Shown here piece by piece: positions 13,869 through 37,774 of a stretch of DNA of 64,000 nt. The position numbers were made by a program, and so were the translations under genes. Every line of letters begins with the position of its first letter. Positions within the stretch are counted from its first letter, which is position 1. Below the pieces are notes generated by a model. It ran no database searches. It worked only from the letters and a program-made list of their open reading frames with translations, and was not told the origin of the DNA. Source of the stretch: Trichosphaerium sp. ATCC 40318 (taxonomy: Eukaryota > Protista > Tubulinea); assembly GCA_038496445.1 (NCBI GenBank), contig JALMLS010000354.1:186001-250000 (forward strand), in the 5' to 3' direction.

Positions 13869-14960
13869 ATGGCAAGCATTATCGAACCTGTCAGCGACGC
13901 TATACTGCATTGGATTAACCCCGAATTAAAAGTACAGTCCACGAAAGGATGGCCACTCGTTAGCCTCACCGAAGCGCTAGCCGTAGTCGCCGGTTACTTA
14001 GCTTTCGTGTTTATTACCTCAAAATTGGTTCAAGCCACTAAGACTGACTTCAAATGGCTCATCAAGCTTGGCCAGTTCTTTTATAATCCATTTCAAGTGA
14101 TTTGCTGCTCATACATGGTTTTTGAAGCGCTTCGCTTGGCAATTGATATGAACTTCGCCCCACTTTGTAACCAGTTCGAGGAGAGGTCCACACGCATGGC
14201 TCGCGTCGTCTGGCTGTTTTACTTGTCCAAGGTACAAATCACAACAATAACTTGTACGGGAAATCTAATCTAACTGTTCCAGATAACTGACTTTTGCGAC
14301 ACTGCCTTCATCATTCTTGGACGTAAATGGCGCCAACTGTCATTTTTACATGTTTACCATCACTCTTCCATTTTCCTCATTTACTGGATGGATATTAACG
14401 TTGGATACGACGGCGATGTTTACATTACGGTACAAAACCAAAATGACTTTTCGATCCCATTTTTTTTTTTTCGGCGTCTCTTTTTGAACGTTTTGATAAA
14501 AACATGCTTTGAGGACCTTCTTTTTACTCAAAAGGTTTTTCCGCGCTATAACTAGTATACTTACTATTATATTAAGGTTGTTTTGAATGGATTTGTTCAT
14601 GTTGTTATGTATTATTACTACTTTTTGACAACTTTCAATATTCGACCATGGTGGAAGAAATATTTGACATACATGCAAATGGCTCAATTTGTTATTATGA
14701 ACATTACTGCCATCTACACTCTTGCATTTGGTACGTGTACTTTTGAAAAAAAAAGGTCATCTATAGACCTATCAAAACGATAAACAAGGAAAACAAGAAA
14801 ATTAACATTTTTTCTCTTAGGATGCGGAAAATATCCTCGTAATATTGTCATTATTTACTTTATTTACGTGCAATCAATGTTCTGGCTATTTGCAAACTTT
14901 TTATGGAAGAACTACCCTAATAAAGGGTCAAAGGACAAAACAGCAAAGAAGGAGAATTAA
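13869..14960 (+). CDS. ELO/GNS1 very-long-chain fatty acid elongase
   Basis: FYLSKITDFCDT, FLHVYHH histidine box, NGFVHVVMYYYY, KKYLTYMQMAQF, C-terminal KKEN ER-retrieval signal. Confidence 0.95.
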
Positions 14961-15192
14961 AAAAAATCCACTTCTTCACCTTTATTATTTTTTTTGTTTG
15001 CCAGTGTTCGATAAACGCTGGGTACAATACCAAACCAAAAAAAAAATAAAGATACAATTTTTTCCATAGTAGGTCGTCTCACTTAACTAAGGTTAAGCCA
15101 AACAAAGAAAAAAAAAGTCACTGAAAGAAAACTTGTTTGGCGCGCAATCTAAATAACAAAGCTGCACGTCAGCGTTTTGTAGTACTATTGCG

Positions 15193-17853
15193 ATGAATAT
15201 TTTTCGTATTGATTACAAGTCCATGGTTAAGGGCAAAGAGGTCACCATCAATAAGAGAGTAGAGGCTATGTTAAAGTAAGCGTATTTTGCGGTGATTTCA
15301 AACACAAATTTGATGTTCATTTTCCCTTTTAGTGACATTGCCTTTGATGTCTTCCATAAGATCATGTATCACTCAATACTACTCATGCATAAGCAAGCAG
15401 AAGGTTTAAAATGTTGTATTCCAATAAGCAGTTTACTGACATTTTTTTTCAAGAGAGGAAGAACGCTCCAACAACCATTTCAGCAAGACATGTACAAACA
15501 TCTGTGAGGCTTGTATTGAACGCGGAACTGTCTATGCATGCTATATCACAAGCCGTCAAAGGTATGCCCAGCTATGAAGGGTTGTGTTAGCTCTAACAAG
15601 AAAAAGCTGTGACAAAATACAAGAACGACAAACTAGAGAAGAATCGTAAGAAGTACGACAAGATTTCTGATTCACGAGTAAAAAAAGCAATGAAGTATGG
15701 TAAGAACTCTCTTTGCTATGGTAATAATCACGTGAATAATTAACATTTCATTCAATAGAATGGCAAGGGCGTATAACACCATCAGCGGCAGTTTATTTTG
15801 CTGCTGTGATTGAGTACATTGCTTTTGAGGTTGTTGATATTGCCTATGAACTCTGTAAAACGAAACCCATTCTGCAACGGACAGATATCGTTGCTGCTAT
15901 CCATGGAGATGAGGATCTTAGCACTTTAATTGATTTAAAGAGATGTTGCTTCATAGGCACAGGAAGTAACACAATATATAAGGAACCGAAAACATCATCT
16001 ATTGCAATGTCTTCAAACAGTACATCCCAGCCACCAACACAAGTTGTGCAGGAGTCTTCGTCTCTTATAGCCCCAGATACTGCCTCATTAGAGTTTACTG
16101 GAACATGGCAATCAGCTCGCTCTGCGTATTTCCCAACAGGTAAAGCGGAAAGTTTTTCTGTTTACTATATACTTTGGTGCAGCTTATTCAATGTTCTACT
16201 GTAGATTATAAGATTTTAAAATTGAGCGTTCTACAATGGACTGATTTTATCGATAAATTAAACAAGTATTACGTAATAGAAGTTCATGAAGGGTTCGAAA
16301 ATGGAACATATTGGTATCGCGTCTATGTCCACAGAGGTAATGTCAATAAACTTATTACCAATCCGAATGGTGGTAAGCGAGAGTCAAGAACTTTGTTCTC
16401 CAAAGAAGAGGTATAAAATGTTCAACAGTTCAAGCTATTTTACAACTGAACTCGTTTTTAGGCGATAGAGCTGTACAATGTGATTTATTCACAAAAAACA
16501 AAGCACCCAACTAAAAAGTACATGCCTGTCAAACTATCACGTGTCTTTGTTGGTAAATTCTATAACGCTATTTATTAAACATAAGTAAACTCATTATACA
16601 TCATTAGGATCACCAAGAGCCAATACATTCTTTAAAAGAGAAAAACCACAAAAGCAGAAAAAGGTAGAAAATCAAAAAAAAAAAACGCAAGAATTCTAAC
16701 TCACAGGTCCTTAGAGTCTCGGTCTTAATACAATGTCAAACGACGTAAGTGATCTTATTGAACTATTGTACAACGAAGCCACCAGTGCACTGACCAAACA
16801 CGTGGTCGCAAAAATTTCTCAAGATGGCATCTCTACGCCATTGGGTATTCTTGCACTTGAGCAACTCCAGGATGCTGAAGCATTATTAAGGGAGATACAT
16901 ACCGTTATCACAGTACAATTATATTATTGTGAATTTTCGGACACTAATATCCCTGTAGACTGGTCGCCAAGACTCGATTGTTAGTGCCTTCAATTTCGCA
17001 GCAAAAGCTACGACAATAGCTCAAGAGGTATCAGGACGCTTTTATTCAACTGTTCCGGAGAAAATGGGTAAAACAAAAGGTAACATCTCTTTTCCTTTTA
17101 GTTTACTTTTTCTTTATTTGTTCGTTGACTGTTTGTCGTAATATAATTTTAGGTGAACGTGCTGCAATGGTTATTAAGACATTGGCTCAAGTTGAAGAAA
17201 AGCAAGAGCTCATACAGCTCATGAAGGATATGAGAGCGGCTAGTCTAACAGGAGATTTATCCAAAAGTGAAATGAAGTATCAAGCACTTGGTAGACAAAT
17301 AACATGCTTAGATGTCTACTCCTTTGAATATCAAGAGATATCAAACCTCTTTTTAAGCACATCTGCACCTCACGTGACAAGTATAACGAATATCTACTCA
17401 TTATCACATGGGCTTGAGGAAAAAAGATTTAAACGCGATATAGGAAATGTAAAAATGCTTTTCCATGGATCTAGAATAAGCAACTGGGTAGGATTGCTCA
17501 TGCATGGTCTACTGATGCCTAGACTTGTTGTGGCTAGAGGAGGAGGCCGTACTGATGCAGGAAACCTTGGATTAGGGTTGTATTTTGGAGACAGATCTTC
17601 AACATCTATTCAATACACGACGCCTTCTTGTTGTGGTAAGCACTATATGCTAGTATGTTCTGTAGCGTTAGGGCGTATCAAGCAGACAACAAAGTATATG
17701 AAACAGCTTATAACAGCTCCAGATAAATATGATAGCGTTCAGGGTGTGGCTGACTGTAATGAGGAAATGTCTTGTTTTAAAGACAACGAGTTTGTTGTGT
17801 ATGATGTCAACCAACACAAACAAGAGTTTCTTGTAGAGTTTGAATTACAATAA
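15193..17853 (+). CDS. Histone H2B-H2A doublet fused to WGR-like, PARP regulatory and PARP4-like catalytic domains
   Basis: Spliced exons give an H2B fold ([13 protein letters not shown]...[34 protein letters not shown]), an H2A fold (AAVYFAAVIEYIAFEVVDIA...IVAAIHGDEDLSTLI), WGR-like (LNKYYVIEVH), regulatory (TPLGIL) and catalytic LFHGSR / GNLGLGLYFGD / DNEFVVY. Confidence 0.9.
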
Positions 17854-18046
17854 AACCAAAAAATTGTTGTGCACGTGTTATCGTTTATTTTTGGGTGACC
17901 AAATGTAATGGAAAGCTGGAGTACTTGAGCGTCCTAGTAGCATCGCACAAACTCGTCATTAATGTATACAGCGTTCTGTGCAATTCAGTGAAAACCATTA
18001 AAAAGTGTTTAGCCAAAGTATTTTTAGTTTGCGCTCATCAGAGCAA

Positions 18047-19102
18047 ATGGCAAAGAATACTGACATGAAACAAAGCGTAGAACAGTTTCTGGAGACATCT
18101 AAACGGCTTGGAAAGTTAGGATGTAACGGAGCACTTCTCAGCTACGTTCGGTTGAAAATTGCATTGTCACCCTCAAGTCCCTTCACACGGCTCTCTACGT
18201 TCGTAACACACTTCGGAAAAGCGGATTACGGCCTTCTTTTCGTTCGTACAACAAAAGATGATAAAAATTGCGTTAAGCTCGTTTCCAAACCAGAAATAGG
18301 ACGACACTACTCTGAAAACAACAGAATTACACCAACATTTTTGATAAAACGCTTAAAACTCAAAATCACAAAAAAACAACTTTGTGTGCTCGAATCCCTC
18401 GTTCTACAACATAATGCTCTCAGTCGCTCACTACAAAATGATTCAATACCTCGCGAATTGGCTAAAAATAAATCTTGGATATCTCTTTCACGTGCTATGC
18501 ATCGTACAAAAAACAATTTTTGTTACTCAAAAGAGAGAATTTGGTTGATCCTTGCTTGGAAGAATAGCCCTACACTTTCAACTCTTCCTTTTGAACTTAT
18601 ACGGTACATTGGTGAATTTCTACCGTATAGTCAAGACCGTATGGGCACGTATTTTAAAACTGTTTACATAGTTTCAAAGCCGGAAGTAGATCAGTCTTCT
18701 TACAGAATAAGTTTCAAACAAAAAAAGAACAACCAGTACACTTTTGAGTATGTCTACAAGAACGATTATAGTTACCATAGTACCCGTAACTACACTGATT
18801 TAATTTACAATGGCACGTGCGCTATTGAAGGACCTTACGTAACGTTTGATGTTACACATTGGGGAACGTGCAAATACGATAATGTGCGCCCAAAGAATTC
18901 CCCTAAAATCAAGGCAGACAGAACTGGCTATATGCAGTTTTATGGGACTTTTCAAAGCAAGACAAGAGATGGAATGCCTGGTATTATCTTATCTGGAATG
19001 GACATTAAAGTCCCAAGTTCGTTGATTCTATTACAATTTGCGCTTAAGACCGACTGCAATGAAAAAGAGTATGGATGCGGGAACAGTGTCTTGTATTGTT
19101 AA
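18047..19102 (+). CDS. Intronless hypothetical protein (about 350 aa) with internal F-box/SOCS-box-like motif
   Basis: Long uninterrupted ORF; LSTLPFELIRYIGEFL motif mid-protein. Confidence 0.7.
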   Translation: MAKNTDMKQSVEQFLETSKRLGKLGCNGALLSYVRLKIALSPSSPFTRLSTFVTHFGKADYGLLFVRTTKDDKNCVKLVSKPEIGRHYSENNRITPTFLIKRLKLKITKKQLCVLESLVLQHNALSRSLQNDSIPRELAKNKSWISLSRAMHRTKNNFCYSKERIWLILAWKNSPTLSTLPFELIRYIGEFLPYSQDRMGTYFKTVYIVSKPEVDQSSYRISFKQKKNNQYTFEYVYKNDYSYHSTRNYTDLIYNGTCAIEGPYVTFDVTHWGTCKYDNVRPKNSPKIKADRTGYMQFYGTFQSKTRDGMPGIILSGMDIKVPSSLILLQFALKTDCNEKEYGCGNSVLYC

Positions 19103-34273: not shown

Positions 34274-37200
34274 CTACTTTCTACGTAGCTGGAACCAGTT
34301 GATATTAAACGAAGGACCTTGCATCACTAGTTTAACTTTATGTTTTCCACCAGAGATTAAATCTACATTTGAGGCTACTGGTCGTTGTTTAAGTGGGAAC
34401 GCTCTTGACGTCTTCCAAGTTTGCCAACCTCCAGTAGTTCCAAACTCGATGTTACCCCAAAGTTTGTTATCAATGAAGACTTTAATCGAATGATCCATAG
34501 ACCTCGCTGATGCGTATCTAACCAAGACTTCATATCTTCCAGGCAAAAAGTCAACATCGTATTCCAAGTATTCTCCTTTGTATACATAGCCTACATTACA
34601 ACCACCGTCCCTATCAGTTGTGCGTTCCAAATCTACCTGAGCTTTTCCAGGTACAACTTTTCCACACTTTGCGCGTCCTAAACACGTGTCAATCGAGTAA
34701 TTTTTTGTGTCAAAAAAAACTGTTTTACCTAGGTTCGCTTCTGTAGTATCAAAAAAGTTCGTGTATGCTTCAGCTTCTATTTTAGATGGGGCTTTAAGTC
34801 CCATTTTAGATGGAGCTTTAACTCCCGTTTTAGATGGGGCTTTAATTACTTTCGCAATAGGTTGAAGTGTTGGACTTTCAGTGATTGACTTAACGTGTTC
34901 AAAAGGGTTAGGAACAGGAATACCGCACTGGGTGCACGGTGAAACAAAGTTCCATCTTGGTATTATTTGCCTGTTAGAGTTCTCTCTACGACTGACACAG
35001 CTAATACATCTATCTCTGTATATTGCTGGTATCACTAAAAGATCAATAGGTGGAGTTGAAGGGCCAAAGCCTGAAGGAGCAGTCTTTTGTAGATAAGTTG
35101 TCAAGAACATTGGATCATGTGGATCAGTTGTTGTAACGAAGGAACCAAGTGTATCAGTTGCGTCACGTGCTTGAACAGCGTAACATAATAAAGTCCTTGG
35201 GTTCCTGCCATGACGTTCTTTTAAAGTGTCACATTCTTTAGGAAGCAAACTGATGTATTTATCATATGCTGTTTTGATTTTTGCTGGTGCTACAACAATA
35301 CCTGTACACAATTTAACACGTGTGCAAATATCAATACACGGTTGAGCATTGTTATTAGCAATGAATTGACATTTACCAATAACTTTTTTGTATCCTGGTG
35401 TGAACGCATGATCAACACGTCTAGAAGGAAGAAAAAAGTAAGAAAAAAAAAGTCAGGAAATAAAAAAAAAGTCAATGTTCGTGAGAGACTAAAAAAAAGC
35501 CGTACTCGTAAGTTATTGAGTTGCTTGGTTGTGTAGGTGTATTAGAATAATCAGGTGTTGGTACACCTTTAGGCCACTGATTATAGTTTGTTCCTTTTGT
35601 ACCATAGATGTTTTTTACTTGTTCATCTTTGTAGTCAACATGAATACAATCATAGTATCCATTCCAGTTGTAAGCAACAACATAACGACCAAAATCAGAA
35701 CCAGGAGGTATCATAAGTTCAGCAACATCGTTATCTGCTGGCCTGTGAGTTGACTTCATAGTATACTTGTATACAGCAACAATATCTGGGTACTTAGAGC
35801 TCTTGTATGCAACATACTTGTTGCCTGCAATATCAGCAGCATTGTACTCATATAACCTGTACACTGACTGCTTCAAGTTCTTCATTTTGATATTTCTCTT
35901 ATTCGCAAAAGAGTCTCTAAGATACATAGGATCACCTGGCATGATTTCGCGCTTGTATGTTCCCGGGTTCGCATTGTAGTTTGTGATCAACCTAAACAGA
36001 GGCTTTGCACTGAGTTTTGCGCTCTCTGGAGCATCATTGAGGTATTGTTCGTAGTCTGATCGGTTGAACTTTGCAAGTTCATCCAGAGAGTCTACTGGGA
36101 CGATAGCAAAGAAAACTGAGTGTTTACCAGCGTGTCCTAATGACCACTCGACTTCAAACCGTTGGTTTGGACCGACTTGTATGTTAGGTGCGTTTCCGAC
36201 TTTTGTTGGACAAGGTTTTTGTGTTGAAGCTCTTCCTTGTGAGGTCGAAGGAGAACCGACCCAGTTGTGAGCGTTTACAGTTGTCAAAATGATTGTCAAC
36301 GTAAGTACGCCGACCAACATGAACGAAATGTTCATTTGGGACCCTTTCCCGCTTGTTTTCGGAACAAGGAGAGACACCAATAGCACTAACGCAATCAAAG
36401 CAACGCTAGTATAAAAATAAGGAACCGAAACAAAAAAGAAAAAAAAAAGATCGAGTTCTCCAAACACGTGCCTTTGAGAGTTTGAAGAGGCGCTATTGGT
36501 AATTTGTGTCTTGACTATTTGGGTGGTGGTTTCGTCTTTTGTTGTAGTTGAATCAACGCTACGCTTAGGGGCAGAAGTACAGGCACAAATTGTTTGATGT
36601 GACCTGCTTCTAGCATTGCAATTGACTTCCTTTGCACAATTCTTCGGTTGATACAAGCAGTACTGTCCCTTTCTAAATGTTCCCAAAGGTGAACACGTGG
36701 ACAACGTCAAAGGCGAGCATATCAAGTCGTTTTGATCAACAACTTCAGACATCGCTTTAGCTGTGTTGATAGATTTCATCATAGCAGCGTTGCAAGTTTT
36801 TCCAACTTCTTTGCAAGTCCTTGTACAAGACTGACGCAGCTTAGATTCATACCACGTCTTTTCAACTTTACCAAGTTCATGCATTGTGTAATCACCTTTG
36901 ACGTTCGGATGGTAGAATGCTCCTGTGTTAGCAGGACCTTGTTTGATCAGAACACGGAAAAAAATCTGTCCGGTTCCAGCAGGAGGTGCCAAAAATTTAA
37001 AGTGTGCTACTAATGGCTTCACATCAGCGGATGTATGCGTTACAGAGTGTGAACATGAGTGTCCTGAATCTCCCCAAGGTTTTTGAAAGAATGCTAAGGA
37101 CAAGAATGCGTTAGGCAGGGCGCACGGAATGCAAAACGGGTTTCAACGGAAGAAAAAAACTAAAATATTAGAGCGTACCAGGAACTTCGTCCAAGAGCTT

Positions 37201-37774
37201 GATAGATCCAACTCTTTGTCCTTTAGTATCTTCAGCATACATGAGCATACCACGATACTATGTTTTAGTTAGCGATAGACGCTTGGTTCGGAAGGTAGAC
37301 GTGTGTACCTTCAAGTTGTAATTAACAACTTTAACAGTTAAAGTTTGAACACGATTTGGAGCGTAAGTCGTTGACGGATTGCTTTCTTTTCCAACGAATA
37401 CCCGTATACCATCAGTACGAACAGCTTTAGTTGCCCAAGACATAATAGCATCCTTATCTCTGCATTTGAGTCTATCTTCAACGCCATCGACAATCGGGTA
37501 CTATTTTAAAAAGATAAGCCTTCGTTCACCTCTTTTTGAGTCTCGTACCATTCCTTTCGGACATCCAAAGCCTTTATGAAGCGCATTGCAAATACTAGGG
37601 GTACCAGAGGAATTAGCGTCACAAAAGACGACAAAGAGAGTGAGTGTGATACAAACACATACGCCCTAACGGAGTAAGCAAAGTGAGCCAAGTTGTGCGC
37701 TTTAAAATAGCTATTGTAGTTTCCGTTTGACGCTAGCGTACAATATGTGATTGAAAGAAAGTGGATTCAACCAT
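34274..37774 (-). CDS. Secreted/membrane multidomain protein: Reeler, Cys-rich, two hydrophobic segments, His-brace LPMO-like, PAN-like, CBM6
   Basis: Reeler (YRGMLMYA, SVTHTSADVK, APPAGTGQIFFR); VNA-HNWVGSP...WSLGH...YNWNGYYDC; CBM6 (IEAEAY, GEYLEYDV, RYAS, TGGWQTW, FNINWF). 5' end uncertain (37774 or 37586). Confidence 0.75.
34780..34851 (-). repeat. Three imperfect 24-bp coding repeats (xxxKAPSK) before CBM6
   Basis: KVIKAPSK-TGVKAPSK-MGLKAPSK; ttttagatggrgcttta repeated three times on the plus strand. Confidence 0.85.

What the first reader, a model, noticed from the sequence alone, without database searches (positions are those of the whole stretch)
15193..17853. Single-chain histone H2B-H2A doublet fused to a catalytically intact PARP
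Seen: the first five short exons, mostly invisible in the ORF track, splice in frame (introns beginning near 15276, 15404, 15562, 15700). They give [92 protein letters not shown], a short basic linker, then ISDSRVKKAMKYEWQGRITPSAAVYFAAVIEYIAFEVVDIAYELC...IVAAIHGDEDLSTLI. The frame continues through an S/T linker into WGR-like, regulatory and catalytic PARP domains. Known: these segments match H2B ([34 protein letters not shown]) and H2A ([20 protein letters not shown]...IRNDEELNKLL). H2B-H2A doublets in this order occur in Marseilleviridae, and macroH2A joins H2A to an ADP-ribose reader. The H-Y-E triad is intact and RTDAGNLGLGLYF resembles PARP4. Inference: a tailless histone dimer carrying its own ADP-ribose writer, which could be loaded into nucleosomes, bind histone chaperones or act as a decoy or sensor for viral histones. 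I know of no described protein with this architecture.
Basis: partly seen in the sequence, partly recalled or inferred. Interest (0 to 1): 0.92.

Follow-up and report, generated by a model that had tools for sequence, protein, structure and literature searches.

The report
Histone pair fused to PARP enzyme
An amoeba gene really does join, in one chain, a tail-less copy of the DNA-packing histone pair H2B plus H2A.Z to a complete ADP-ribose-adding enzyme (PARP), a combination I could not find described or present anywhere else, although what it does in the cell is untested.

Summary
An 11-exon, 702-residue gene (15193-17853, + strand, ten GT-AG introns of 45-73 nt) encodes these parts in order:
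- a tail-less H2B fold;
- a short basic linker;
- an H2A.Z-like fold;
- a Ser/Thr-rich linker of about 55 residues;
- a full WGR, regulatory (HD) and catalytic PARP module with H-Y-E intact.

It joins the histone exons to the first WGR exon. The fusion point itself lies inside one continuous exon (exon 5). Exons 6-11 have no read cover, but the spliced product aligns end to end (E 1e-98) with bacterial WGR-PARP proteins of about 475 residues.

A profile of giant-virus H2B-H2A doublets matches residues 18-177 in one stretch (77 bits; best of 500 shuffles 6.8).

No protein with this architecture turned up in an exhaustive search of 1.84 billion cluster representatives, or in two PARP family surveys.

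Function is inferred only. The histone pair probably acts as a docking module on chromatin or on histone-handling proteins. Several features argue against an ordinary nucleosomal histone.

Earlier scan notes report stand-alone H2B-H2A doublet genes elsewhere in this genome, but not this fusion.

The parts
15172..15192 (+). 5' untranslated start of the observed spliced contig; an in-frame TAA at 15154-15156 closes the frame upstream of the ATG
15193..15275 (+). exon 1 (Met1 to residue 27, then 2 nt): start of the H2B-like fold, with no N-terminal tail
15333..15403 (+). exon 2: H2B-like helix alpha2
15454..15561 (+). exon 3: H2B-like L2, alpha3 and start of alphaC; 17 of 33 residues identical to H2B
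15607..15699 (+). exon 4: H2B C-terminal AVTKY, a basic linker between the two folds, and H2A-like alpha1
15759..16139 (+). exon 5: H2A.Z-like L1 to alphaC (to about 15937), Ser/Thr-rich linker (15938-16099), and the first ~13 residues homologous to the N-terminus of WGR-PARP proteins. The fusion junction lies inside this one exon.
16205..16410 (+). exon 6: WGR domain, first part; signature is HRGN (residue 288) instead of the family's HYGR
16462..16552 (+). exon 7: WGR domain, second part
16608..16663 (+). exon 8: short basic spacer between WGR and the regulatory domain, 9 residues shorter than in bacterial relatives
16715..16912 (+). exon 9: PARP regulatory (helical, HD) domain, first part
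16959..17079 (+). exon 10: PARP regulatory domain, middle part
17153..17853 (+). exon 11: end of the regulatory domain and the PARP catalytic domain (H574, Y613, E682); TAA stop at 17851-17853

Best explanation
What it is (shown). One expressed, intron-rich amoebal gene encodes a 702-residue protein with these parts in order:
- a tail-less H2B fold (about residues 1-95);
- a basic linker of about 12 residues;
- an H2A.Z-like fold (about 108-178);
- a flexible Ser/Thr-rich linker (about 179-232);
- a complete WGR, helical regulatory domain and H-Y-E catalytic PARP module (233-702).

How it most likely works (inferred).
1. The two histone folds pair with each other inside the chain, as in viral H2B-H2A doublets and engineered single-chain H2B-H2A.Z.
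2. This presents the surface of an H2A.Z-H2B dimer, including a nearly complete acidic patch.
3. The dimer acts as a docking or targeting module. It would plug the enzyme into whatever handles or binds H2A(.Z)-H2B dimers, such as import and deposition chaperones, remodellers, acidic-patch binders, and possibly the nucleosome itself.
4. The regulatory domain would keep the catalytic site closed until the N-terminal modules are engaged.
5. The enzyme would then ADP-ribosylate itself and neighbouring chromatin proteins. The Ser/Thr linker sits where PARP1 carries its automodification region.

I rate the architecture at about 0.9 and this targeting mechanism at about 0.5.
For: Architecture.
- The gene model is open, with 10 GT-AG introns.
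- A spliced contig covers exons 1-6.
- The junction lies inside exon 5, which carries both the H2A.Z-like fold and the start of homology to WGR-PARP N-termini.
- Residues 237-700 align as one domain to 473-485-aa WGR/PARP_reg/PARP proteins at E 1e-98.
- The doublet profile matches at 77 bits against at most 6.8 bits for shuffles.
- H2B and H2A.Z give significant PDB hits.

Mechanism.
- Seven of eight acidic-patch positions stay acidic: E137, E142, D145, D169, E170 and D171 in the H2A half and E76 in the H2B half. Only the position corresponding to H2B E113 is lost (Q84) (positions from established nucleosome structure knowledge).
- The H2A.Z-type alpha3-alphaC residues (GDE..S/T-L-I) are kept.
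- H-Y-E and 109 of 168 family-invariant columns are kept, so the enzyme is under constraint.
- The linker is 33% Ser/Thr and lies directly before WGR.
- Earlier unverified scan notes report stand-alone H2B-H2A doublet genes in the same genome, which would be a ready source of the module.
Against: - No read cover for exons 7-11. The type of run X1 is not on record, so RNA origin is inferred from the five removed introns.
- No structure prediction of the spliced protein was possible, so the intramolecular handshake dimer is inferred from collinearity with doublets.
- No orthologue was found, so conservation of the fusion cannot be shown.
- The histone part is very diverged (about 42% identity to H2A.Z, about 52% to H2B in alpha3-alphaC).
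- The H2A half has net charge -3, against +4 for an H2A.Z fold.
- Both N-terminal tails, the H2A alphaN segment and most of the docking tail are missing. L1 and L2 of the H2A half are shortened, and 6 residues are inserted at the end of H2B alpha2.
- The WGR signature that is 99-100% conserved in relatives (THYGRTDD) reads VHRGNVNK here, so the usual activation route may not operate.
Confidence: 0.55

Rival explanations
1. Writer-histone. The doublet replaces an H2A(.Z)-H2B dimer inside nucleosomes, as macroH2A places a macro domain there. The PARP would then be a covalent part of chromatin and modify the neighbouring nucleosome surface.
For: - The H2B-then-H2A order leaves the H2A C-terminus free, the same exit point as the macroH2A linker (established knowledge).
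- The module is collinear with viral doublets, and viral doublets are known to form nucleosomes (PMC8357426, abstract seen).
- The acidic patch and the first residues of the docking segment (IGTG, aligned to AGGG of a viral H2A) are kept.
- The doublet as a whole is basic, net +7.
- Stand-alone doublet genes are reported in this genome (unverified notes).
Against: - The H2A half is acidic.
- The L1 and L2 DNA-binding loops are shortened, and alphaN and most of the docking domain are absent.
- The residue aligned near the conserved Tyr at the end of H2B alpha2 is not Tyr, and 6 residues are inserted next to it. By my recollection this region forms the H2B-H4 four-helix bundle.
- Identity to core histones is far below what nucleosomal histones usually keep. 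Talbert et al. give mean identities of 83-91% in the histone-fold domains (PMC9145170).
Confidence: 0.22
2. Bait or decoy sensor. The soluble histone-dimer mimic is an integrated decoy for factors that attack or bind host H2A-H2B, for example from giant viruses. Binding would switch on the PARP as an immune effector.
For: - The divergence pattern fits: binding surfaces are kept while nucleosome-specific features are lost.
- The WGR signature is lost while the autoinhibitory domain is kept, so a different trigger is needed.
- Earlier scan notes, which are unverified, describe other PARP fusions to sensor-like modules and histone pieces displayed in other proteins of this genome.
Against: No direct evidence of any kind. 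There is no sign of diversifying selection, no paralogue family in the window, no viral partner, and no special similarity to viral over cellular histones.
Confidence: 0.13
3. Generic DNA-binding head. The basic histone-fold pair simply binds DNA. It would replace the zinc fingers or SAP motifs that other WGR-HD-CAT PARPs use, and compensate for a degenerate WGR motif in sensing DNA damage.
For: - PARPs with a WGR-regulatory-catalytic core carry varied N-terminal DNA-binding modules (PMC4245714).
- The doublet has net charge +7, and basic residues of H2A alpha1 and the L1 arginine are kept.
- The WGR motif is degenerate.
Against: The H2A half is acidic, the L2 basic cluster is shortened, and the tails are absent. 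A free H2A-H2B dimer binds DNA weakly and without break specificity (established knowledge).
Confidence: 0.1
4. Artefact or decaying fusion. Either the histone doublet and the PARP are really separate genes joined only by my model, or the fusion is a recent neutral accident with no function.
For: No reads cover exons 7-11. No orthologue is known. The histone and WGR parts are strongly diverged.
Against: - There is no stop between the H2A fold and the start of PARP homology inside exon 5.
- Intron 5 is seen spliced, joining to the WGR exon.
- All 11 exons stay in frame with no frameshift or stop.
- 65% of family-invariant positions and the catalytic triad are intact.
- Of the two contig differences that were listed, one is synonymous and one is V to I.
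Confidence: 0.06

Closest known systems
macroH2A (H2A fold plus linker plus macro domain)
   Same: A histone H2A-type fold whose C-terminus runs through a flexible linker into a domain of the ADP-ribose system.
   Different: macroH2A carries a reader/binder rather than a writer. It is a single H2A, not an H2B-H2A chain, and it keeps a near-canonical nucleosomal histone fold.
H2B-H2A histone doublets of giant viruses (Marseilleviridae and metagenomic relatives)
   Same: Same order of folds and the same spacing. A profile of seven viral doublets matches residues 18-177 in one stretch at 77 bits.
   Different: The viral doublets carry no enzyme and no introns. The amoebal module is no closer to viral than to cellular H2A.Z (34.5 against 32 bits).
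Compact WGR, PARP_reg and PARP proteins of bacteria (Myxococcota, Planctomycetota; about 475 aa)
   Same: End-to-end collinear with residues 237-700 (E 1e-98), with the same three domains and the same length.
   Different: Mean identity is only 39%. The amoebal protein sits on a long branch outside 150 sampled members. It has lost the WGR signature, has a 9-residue deletion after WGR, and has gained about 230 N-terminal residues. The bacterial gene examined sits next to a macro-domain gene.
Human PARP4 (vault PARP)
   Same: Best solved-structure match of the catalytic exon (E 2.8e-36), sharing RTD.GNLG, YF.D and EFVVY.
   Different: PARP4 has BRCT, VIT and vWA domains and no WGR. None of BRCT, VIT or vWA is present here, and the catalytic domain here is C-terminal.
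PARP1/2/3 (DNA-damage PARPs)
   Same: WGR, helical regulatory domain and H-Y-E catalytic core, with a Ser-rich flexible region just before WGR as in PARP1.
   Different: Weaker similarity (PARP2 E 1.5e-17, PARP1 E 1e-7 or weaker). There are no zinc fingers or BRCT. The tryptophan and arginine of the WGR motif are not kept.
Non-nucleosomal histone-fold pairs inside signalling proteins (SOS1 N-terminal histone domain; ABTB2/BTBD11, Pfam Histone_ABTB)
   Same: Histone folds used as a built-in module of a larger enzyme or adaptor rather than as chromatin building blocks (SOS1 from my own knowledge; PF26281 seen).
   Different: Those folds have lost clear identity with a particular core histone. 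Here the H2B and H2A.Z identities are still recognisable by plain sequence search.

Membership tests
Histone H2B | Histone fold (alpha1-L1-alpha2-L2-alpha3) plus alphaC ending in the AVTKY-type motif | tested here: met
   Exon 3 hits H2B chains at E 4e-7 to 7e-5. Residues 16-94 align to a viral H2B singlet that carries Pfam Histone. AVTKY is at residue 88.
Histone H2B | Basic N-terminal tail | tested here: not met
   Met1 lies about 17 residues before the profile match. There is an in-frame stop at 15154, and the contig starts at 15172.
Histone H2A.Z | H2A-type histone fold with H2A.Z-type alpha3-alphaC residues | tested here: met
   H2A.Z chains score 28.8 bits (E 1.4e-5) against at most 23.3 bits for canonical H2A. 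The spliced alignment covers H2A.Z residues 41-110.
Histone H2A.Z | AlphaN segment (AGLQFPV), full docking domain and C-terminal tail, as needed for the canonical nucleosome position | tested here: not met
   The alignment starts at alpha1 and ends at alphaC. The sequence then runs into the Ser/Thr linker. Pfam Histone_H2A_C was not found.
Pfam Histone (PF00125) | Score above the gathering threshold | tested here: inconclusive
   No hit on the separate exon pieces. The spliced protein has no reference and could not be given to the Pfam tool. A home-made doublet profile gives 77 bits.
Single-chain H2B-H2A doublet | Both folds in one chain, in H2B-then-H2A order, collinear with known doublets | tested here: met
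   One alignment stretch, model residues 18-177 to profile positions 22-190, E 5e-23. Exons 1-5 are joined in a spliced contig.
PARP (ARTD, H-Y-E class) | PF00644 catalytic domain with His, Tyr and Glu of the triad | tested here: met
   PF00644 at 1e-30 and 107 bits. H574, Y613 and E682 align with the family and with PARP4.
PARP (ARTD, H-Y-E class) | NAD+-dependent ADP-ribosyl transfer | not testable with these tools
   This needs an enzyme assay.
WGR-PRD-CAT PARPs | WGR domain followed by the helical regulatory domain and the catalytic domain, collinear | tested here: met
   Residues 237-700 align as one domain to proteins carrying PF05406, PF02877 and PF00644.
WGR-PRD-CAT PARPs | Conserved WGR-type signature (HYGR in the nearest family, WGR in PARP1) | tested here: not met
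   The motif reads HRGN at residue 288. Y289R, R291N, T292V, D293N and D294K fall at columns 99-100% conserved in 150 relatives.
PARP4 / vault PARP clade | BRCT before, and VIT plus vWA after, a central catalytic domain | tested here: not met
   The catalytic domain is C-terminal and ends at the stop codon. Pfam finds no BRCT, VIT or vWA on any exon. Clade definition from PMC2964712.
macroH2A | H2A fold followed by a macro domain | tested here: not met
   No macro domain is found. The C-terminal module is WGR-PRD-PARP.

The most novel reading that the evidence does not exclude
A 'writer-histone': a variant H2B-H2A.Z doublet that is built into nucleosomes and carries its own ADP-ribosyltransferase. 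The chromatin unit itself would then be the enzyme, the mirror image of macroH2A, which builds an ADP-ribose binder into the nucleosome.
Probability: 0.22. Interest if true: 0.92.

Novelty: new variant of a known kind. Interest (0 to 1): 0.72.

Why it matters
Histones are normally the substrates and landing pads of ADP-ribosylation. PARPs reach them through separate DNA- or protein-binding domains. Here a recognisable H2B-H2A.Z dimer is covalently joined to a PARP.

Three consequences follow:
- It adds a new kind of targeting module to the PARP family.
- It gives a natural, intron-bearing and expressed example of a cellular histone doublet. The literature has treated such cases as mostly annotation errors (PMC9145170).
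- It offers a direct test of whether an enzyme can be delivered through the histone-dimer handling pathway, or even built into nucleosomes.

If the bait reading is right, it would instead be an example of host chromatin mimicry used for defence in a host of giant viruses. Either outcome is experimentally accessible by expression, reconstitution, an NAD+ assay and localisation.

Tried and rejected
- Pfam on each exon separately found only PARP_reg and PARP. Histone and WGR were not seen on the pieces. Exon 2 and exon 6 alone gave nothing against the PDB.
- The exhaustive search of 1.84 billion representatives with exon 5 gave only tandem H2A/H2A.Z predictions and one low-complexity hit. There was no self hit and no fusion.
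- The word-indexed search with exon 5 gave nothing.
- Searches with the catalytic exon, and with a mixed alignment (A1), returned only bacterial-type WGR-PARPs. None carried a histone domain among the 120 listed of 1137. Longer fusions ranked lower could have been missed.
- Scans of viral contigs (exon 5, exon 11) and two scans of metagenome contigs (exon 11, catalytic core) found no close relative.
- The ESM Atlas look-alikes showed no histone-plus-PARP cluster.
- Recent transfer from the sampled bacterial family is not supported. The amoebal module is a long branch outside all 150 members.
- A viral origin of the doublet is neither supported nor excluded.
- Structure prediction, fold search and Pfam on the spliced protein were left out.
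- I did not pursue the organism's identity, because the run's organism and sample names are coded.
Full report
**Gene model**

Reading 14800-18300 and assembling exons by GT-AG borders gives an 11-exon gene on the + strand. The exons are 15193-15275, 15333-15403, 15454-15561, 15607-15699, 15759-16139, 16205-16410, 16462-16552, 16608-16663, 16715-16912, 16959-17079 and 17153-17853. The ten introns are 45-73 nt long. The coding sequence is 2109 nt, stays in frame throughout, and gives 702 residues.

An in-frame TAA at 15154 lies upstream of the ATG at 15193, so the protein starts only a few residues before the first histone helix. There is no H2B tail.

The gene sits between an ELO-family elongase gene upstream and an orphan ORF downstream. 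No second copy of any part occurs in the window.

**Transcript evidence**

Only one public run (X1; 11 million letters, library type not recorded) holds the stretch. One of its contigs, 961 nt long and about 99% identical, lies on 15172-16408. It skips 57, 50, 45, 59 and 65 nt at GT..AG borders identical to introns 1-5.

A sequence lacking five introns must derive from spliced RNA. A processed DNA copy cannot be formally excluded, because the table of joined forms in other runs was not given.

This contig joins all the histone-coding exons to exon 6, the first WGR exon. It stops 2 nt before the end of exon 6, so exons 7-11 have no read support.

Two independent arguments fill that gap.
- The spliced product of exons 5-11 (residues 237-700) aligns as one uninterrupted domain with 473-485-residue proteins that carry Pfam WGR, PARP_reg and PARP. 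The alignment covers target residues 11-472 of 473 at E 1e-98. A wrong splice would break it.
- The homology to the N-terminus of those proteins begins at about residue 233-241, inside exon 5. Exon 5 also encodes the H2A-like fold.

The junction between histone and PARP therefore lies in a single continuous exon and does not depend on any splice.

**The histone part**

Pfam saw no histone domain in the separate exon pieces. Plain sequence searches against the PDB did.
- Exon 3 (35 aa) matches H2B chains over L2-alpha3-alphaC, with 17 of 33 residues identical and E 4e-7 to 7e-5. All hits listed are H2B or engineered H2B-H2A chains.
- The first 58 residues of exon 5 match H2A.Z at E 1.4e-5. All 60 rows shown, of 206 hits, are H2A-type chains. 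H2A.Z scores 28.8 bits against at most 23.3 bits for canonical H2A.

With the exons joined in a script, the H2A.Z alignment extends back to alpha1 (model 111-176 against H2A.Z 41-110).

To test the N-terminal half and the doublet arrangement, I fetched 23 giant-virus loci with H2A-like genes. Several of them encode H2B-H2A doublets with two Pfam Histone stretches.
- The spliced N-terminus aligns to these doublets in a single stretch.
- A profile of seven doublets matches model residues 18-177 to profile positions 22-190 at 77 bits, E 5e-23. The best of 500 shuffled N-termini scores 6.8 bits.
- Residues 16-94 also align to a viral H2B singlet. The amoebal sequence has a 6-residue insertion at the end of alpha2.

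The module is no closer to viral than to cellular histones (H2A half: 34.5 bits to the best viral H2A, 32 bits to H2A.Z). Its origin is open. Earlier notes of this scan, which I could not check, report at least three stand-alone intron-bearing H2B-H2A doublet genes in the same genome. Those would be the simplest source.

*Features of the histone module kept:*
- the AVTKY end of H2B;
- the H2A.Z-type GDE..S/T-L-I of alpha3-alphaC;
- the L1 arginine and the basic residues of H2A alpha1;
- seven of the eight acidic-patch positions (E137, E142, D145, D169, E170, D171 and H2B-half E76; Q84 replaces the eighth). Assigning these positions to the acidic patch rests on established nucleosome structure knowledge.

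*Features lost or changed:*
- both N-terminal tails and the H2A alphaN segment;
- most of the docking tail, which runs into a linker with 33% Ser/Thr;
- two-residue shortenings around L1 and L2 of the H2A half;
- a 6-residue insertion at the end of H2B alpha2;
- charge: the doublet is net +7 overall, but the H2A half is -3 against +4 for an H2A.Z fold.

**The PARP part**
- Pfam gives the PARP catalytic domain at 1e-30 and PARP_reg at 1.5e-5 on single exons.
- The best solved-structure match is human PARP4 (E 2.8e-36), then PARP2 (1.5e-17), PARP3 and PARP1.
- The whole module is nearer to a large family of compact WGR-PARP_reg-PARP proteins found mostly in bacteria (names given: Myxococcota, Pendulispora, Isosphaeraceae, Gemmataceae). 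These give 187 bits on the catalytic exon against 128 bits for PARP4.
- One such gene lies in a clearly bacterial neighbourhood, next to a macro-domain gene.
- Against 150 members, the amoebal protein has 39% mean identity and keeps 109 of 168 columns that are at least 95% conserved. These include H574, Y613 and E682.
- In a quick tree it is a long branch outside all 150 members, so there is no sign of recent transfer.

Notable losses are the family's WGR signature (THYGRTDD reads VHRGNVNK), nine residues after the WGR domain, and a PHR.GR.R motif in the regulatory domain.

**Is the architecture known?**
- The exhaustive HMMER search of 1.84 billion cluster representatives with exon 5 returned five hits. 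One is low complexity and four are tandem H2A or H2A.Z predictions. None is a fusion, and the gene itself is not in the library.
- At that database size, only matches above about 38 bits pass. Close orthologues would have been seen. Distant or independently formed fusions would not.
- Word-indexed searches, viral and metagenome scans, and Atlas look-alikes gave no histone-plus-PARP protein.
- In the two broad PARP family surveys, searching the text for 'histone' and related terms turned up no histone-fold partner (PMC2964712; PMC4245714). The latter notes an expansion of PARP4-like proteins with added domains in Amoebozoa.
- A full-text search for PARP catalytic domain, histone fold and fused found no paper.
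- Talbert et al. regard predicted eukaryotic histone fusions as mostly annotation errors, while allowing that some may be real (PMC9145170). [quoted passage not shown]

**Mechanism**

*Shown:* the domain order, the expressed and spliced N-terminal half, and intact catalytic residues.

*Inferred:* the two folds pair within the chain as in other doublets and present an H2A.Z-H2B-like surface. This works as a docking module. The helical regulatory domain gates the active site. The Ser/Thr linker, placed like PARP1's automodification region, is a tether and a likely self-modification site.

I favour a docking role, on histone-dimer chaperones, remodellers or acidic-patch binders and perhaps on chromatin, over a standard nucleosomal role. 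The features specific to the nucleosome position are the ones that have decayed, while the dimer surface is kept. The loss of the WGR signature suggests that activation no longer runs through the usual nucleic-acid-end contact.

The rivals are nucleosome incorporation (a writer-histone), a bait for foreign factors, a generic DNA-binding head, and an artefact or neutral fusion. They are weighed in their own sections. None is excluded except, largely, the artefact.

**Limits**
All work on the joined sequence was done in scripts from the window file.
- The reads tools were each limited to one call.

**Verdict**

This is a new domain architecture built from known parts. Its function is open but testable.

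Noticed in passing
window 13869-14790 (+): The upstream neighbour is an intron-containing ELO (GNS1/SUR4) fatty-acid elongase gene. Two ORF pieces hit PF01151 at 6e-8 and 4e-15.
   Followed up: partly
window 18005-19102 (+): The downstream neighbour is a single-exon ORF of about 351-365 aa with no Pfam family. It contains an LP.EL..I-type stretch that looks F-box-like by eye; this was not tested.
   Followed up: partly
L001:4001-6188: The nearest bacterial relative of the PARP module (P0010) is followed directly by a macro-domain gene. This is a writer-eraser pair, in a neighbourhood with GGDEF/EAL and kinase-TPR genes. The family is large: 1137 proteins at E<=1e-20. One 753-aa member (P0136) carries WGR, PARP_reg, PARP and Macro domains in a single protein.
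   Followed up: partly
L007:1210-2154 and L007:2223-3095: A giant-virus contig encodes a 315-aa protein with three Pfam Histone stretches (H2B-H2A plus a third fold) and a second histone-like ORF of 291 aa next to it. Other loci (L011, L017, L020-L023) carry histone ORFs of 327-394 aa. Such triplets are described in the literature.
   Followed up: partly
P0002-P0005: The database holds 205-283-aa 'proteins' made of two near-identical H2A or H2A.Z copies in tandem. These are probably mis-joined tandem genes, the kind of false eukaryotic doublet Talbert et al. warn about.
   Followed up: no
window 16140-16204 (intron 5): If intron 5 were retained, the frame would run 21 more codons to a TAG at 16202-16204. 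That would give a doublet-plus-linker protein without the PARP. No such form was seen in the one contig available.
   Followed up: no
window 35620-37774: Another first-stage note on this window proposes a Reeler/LPMO-like polyprotein. I did not examine it.
   Followed up: no
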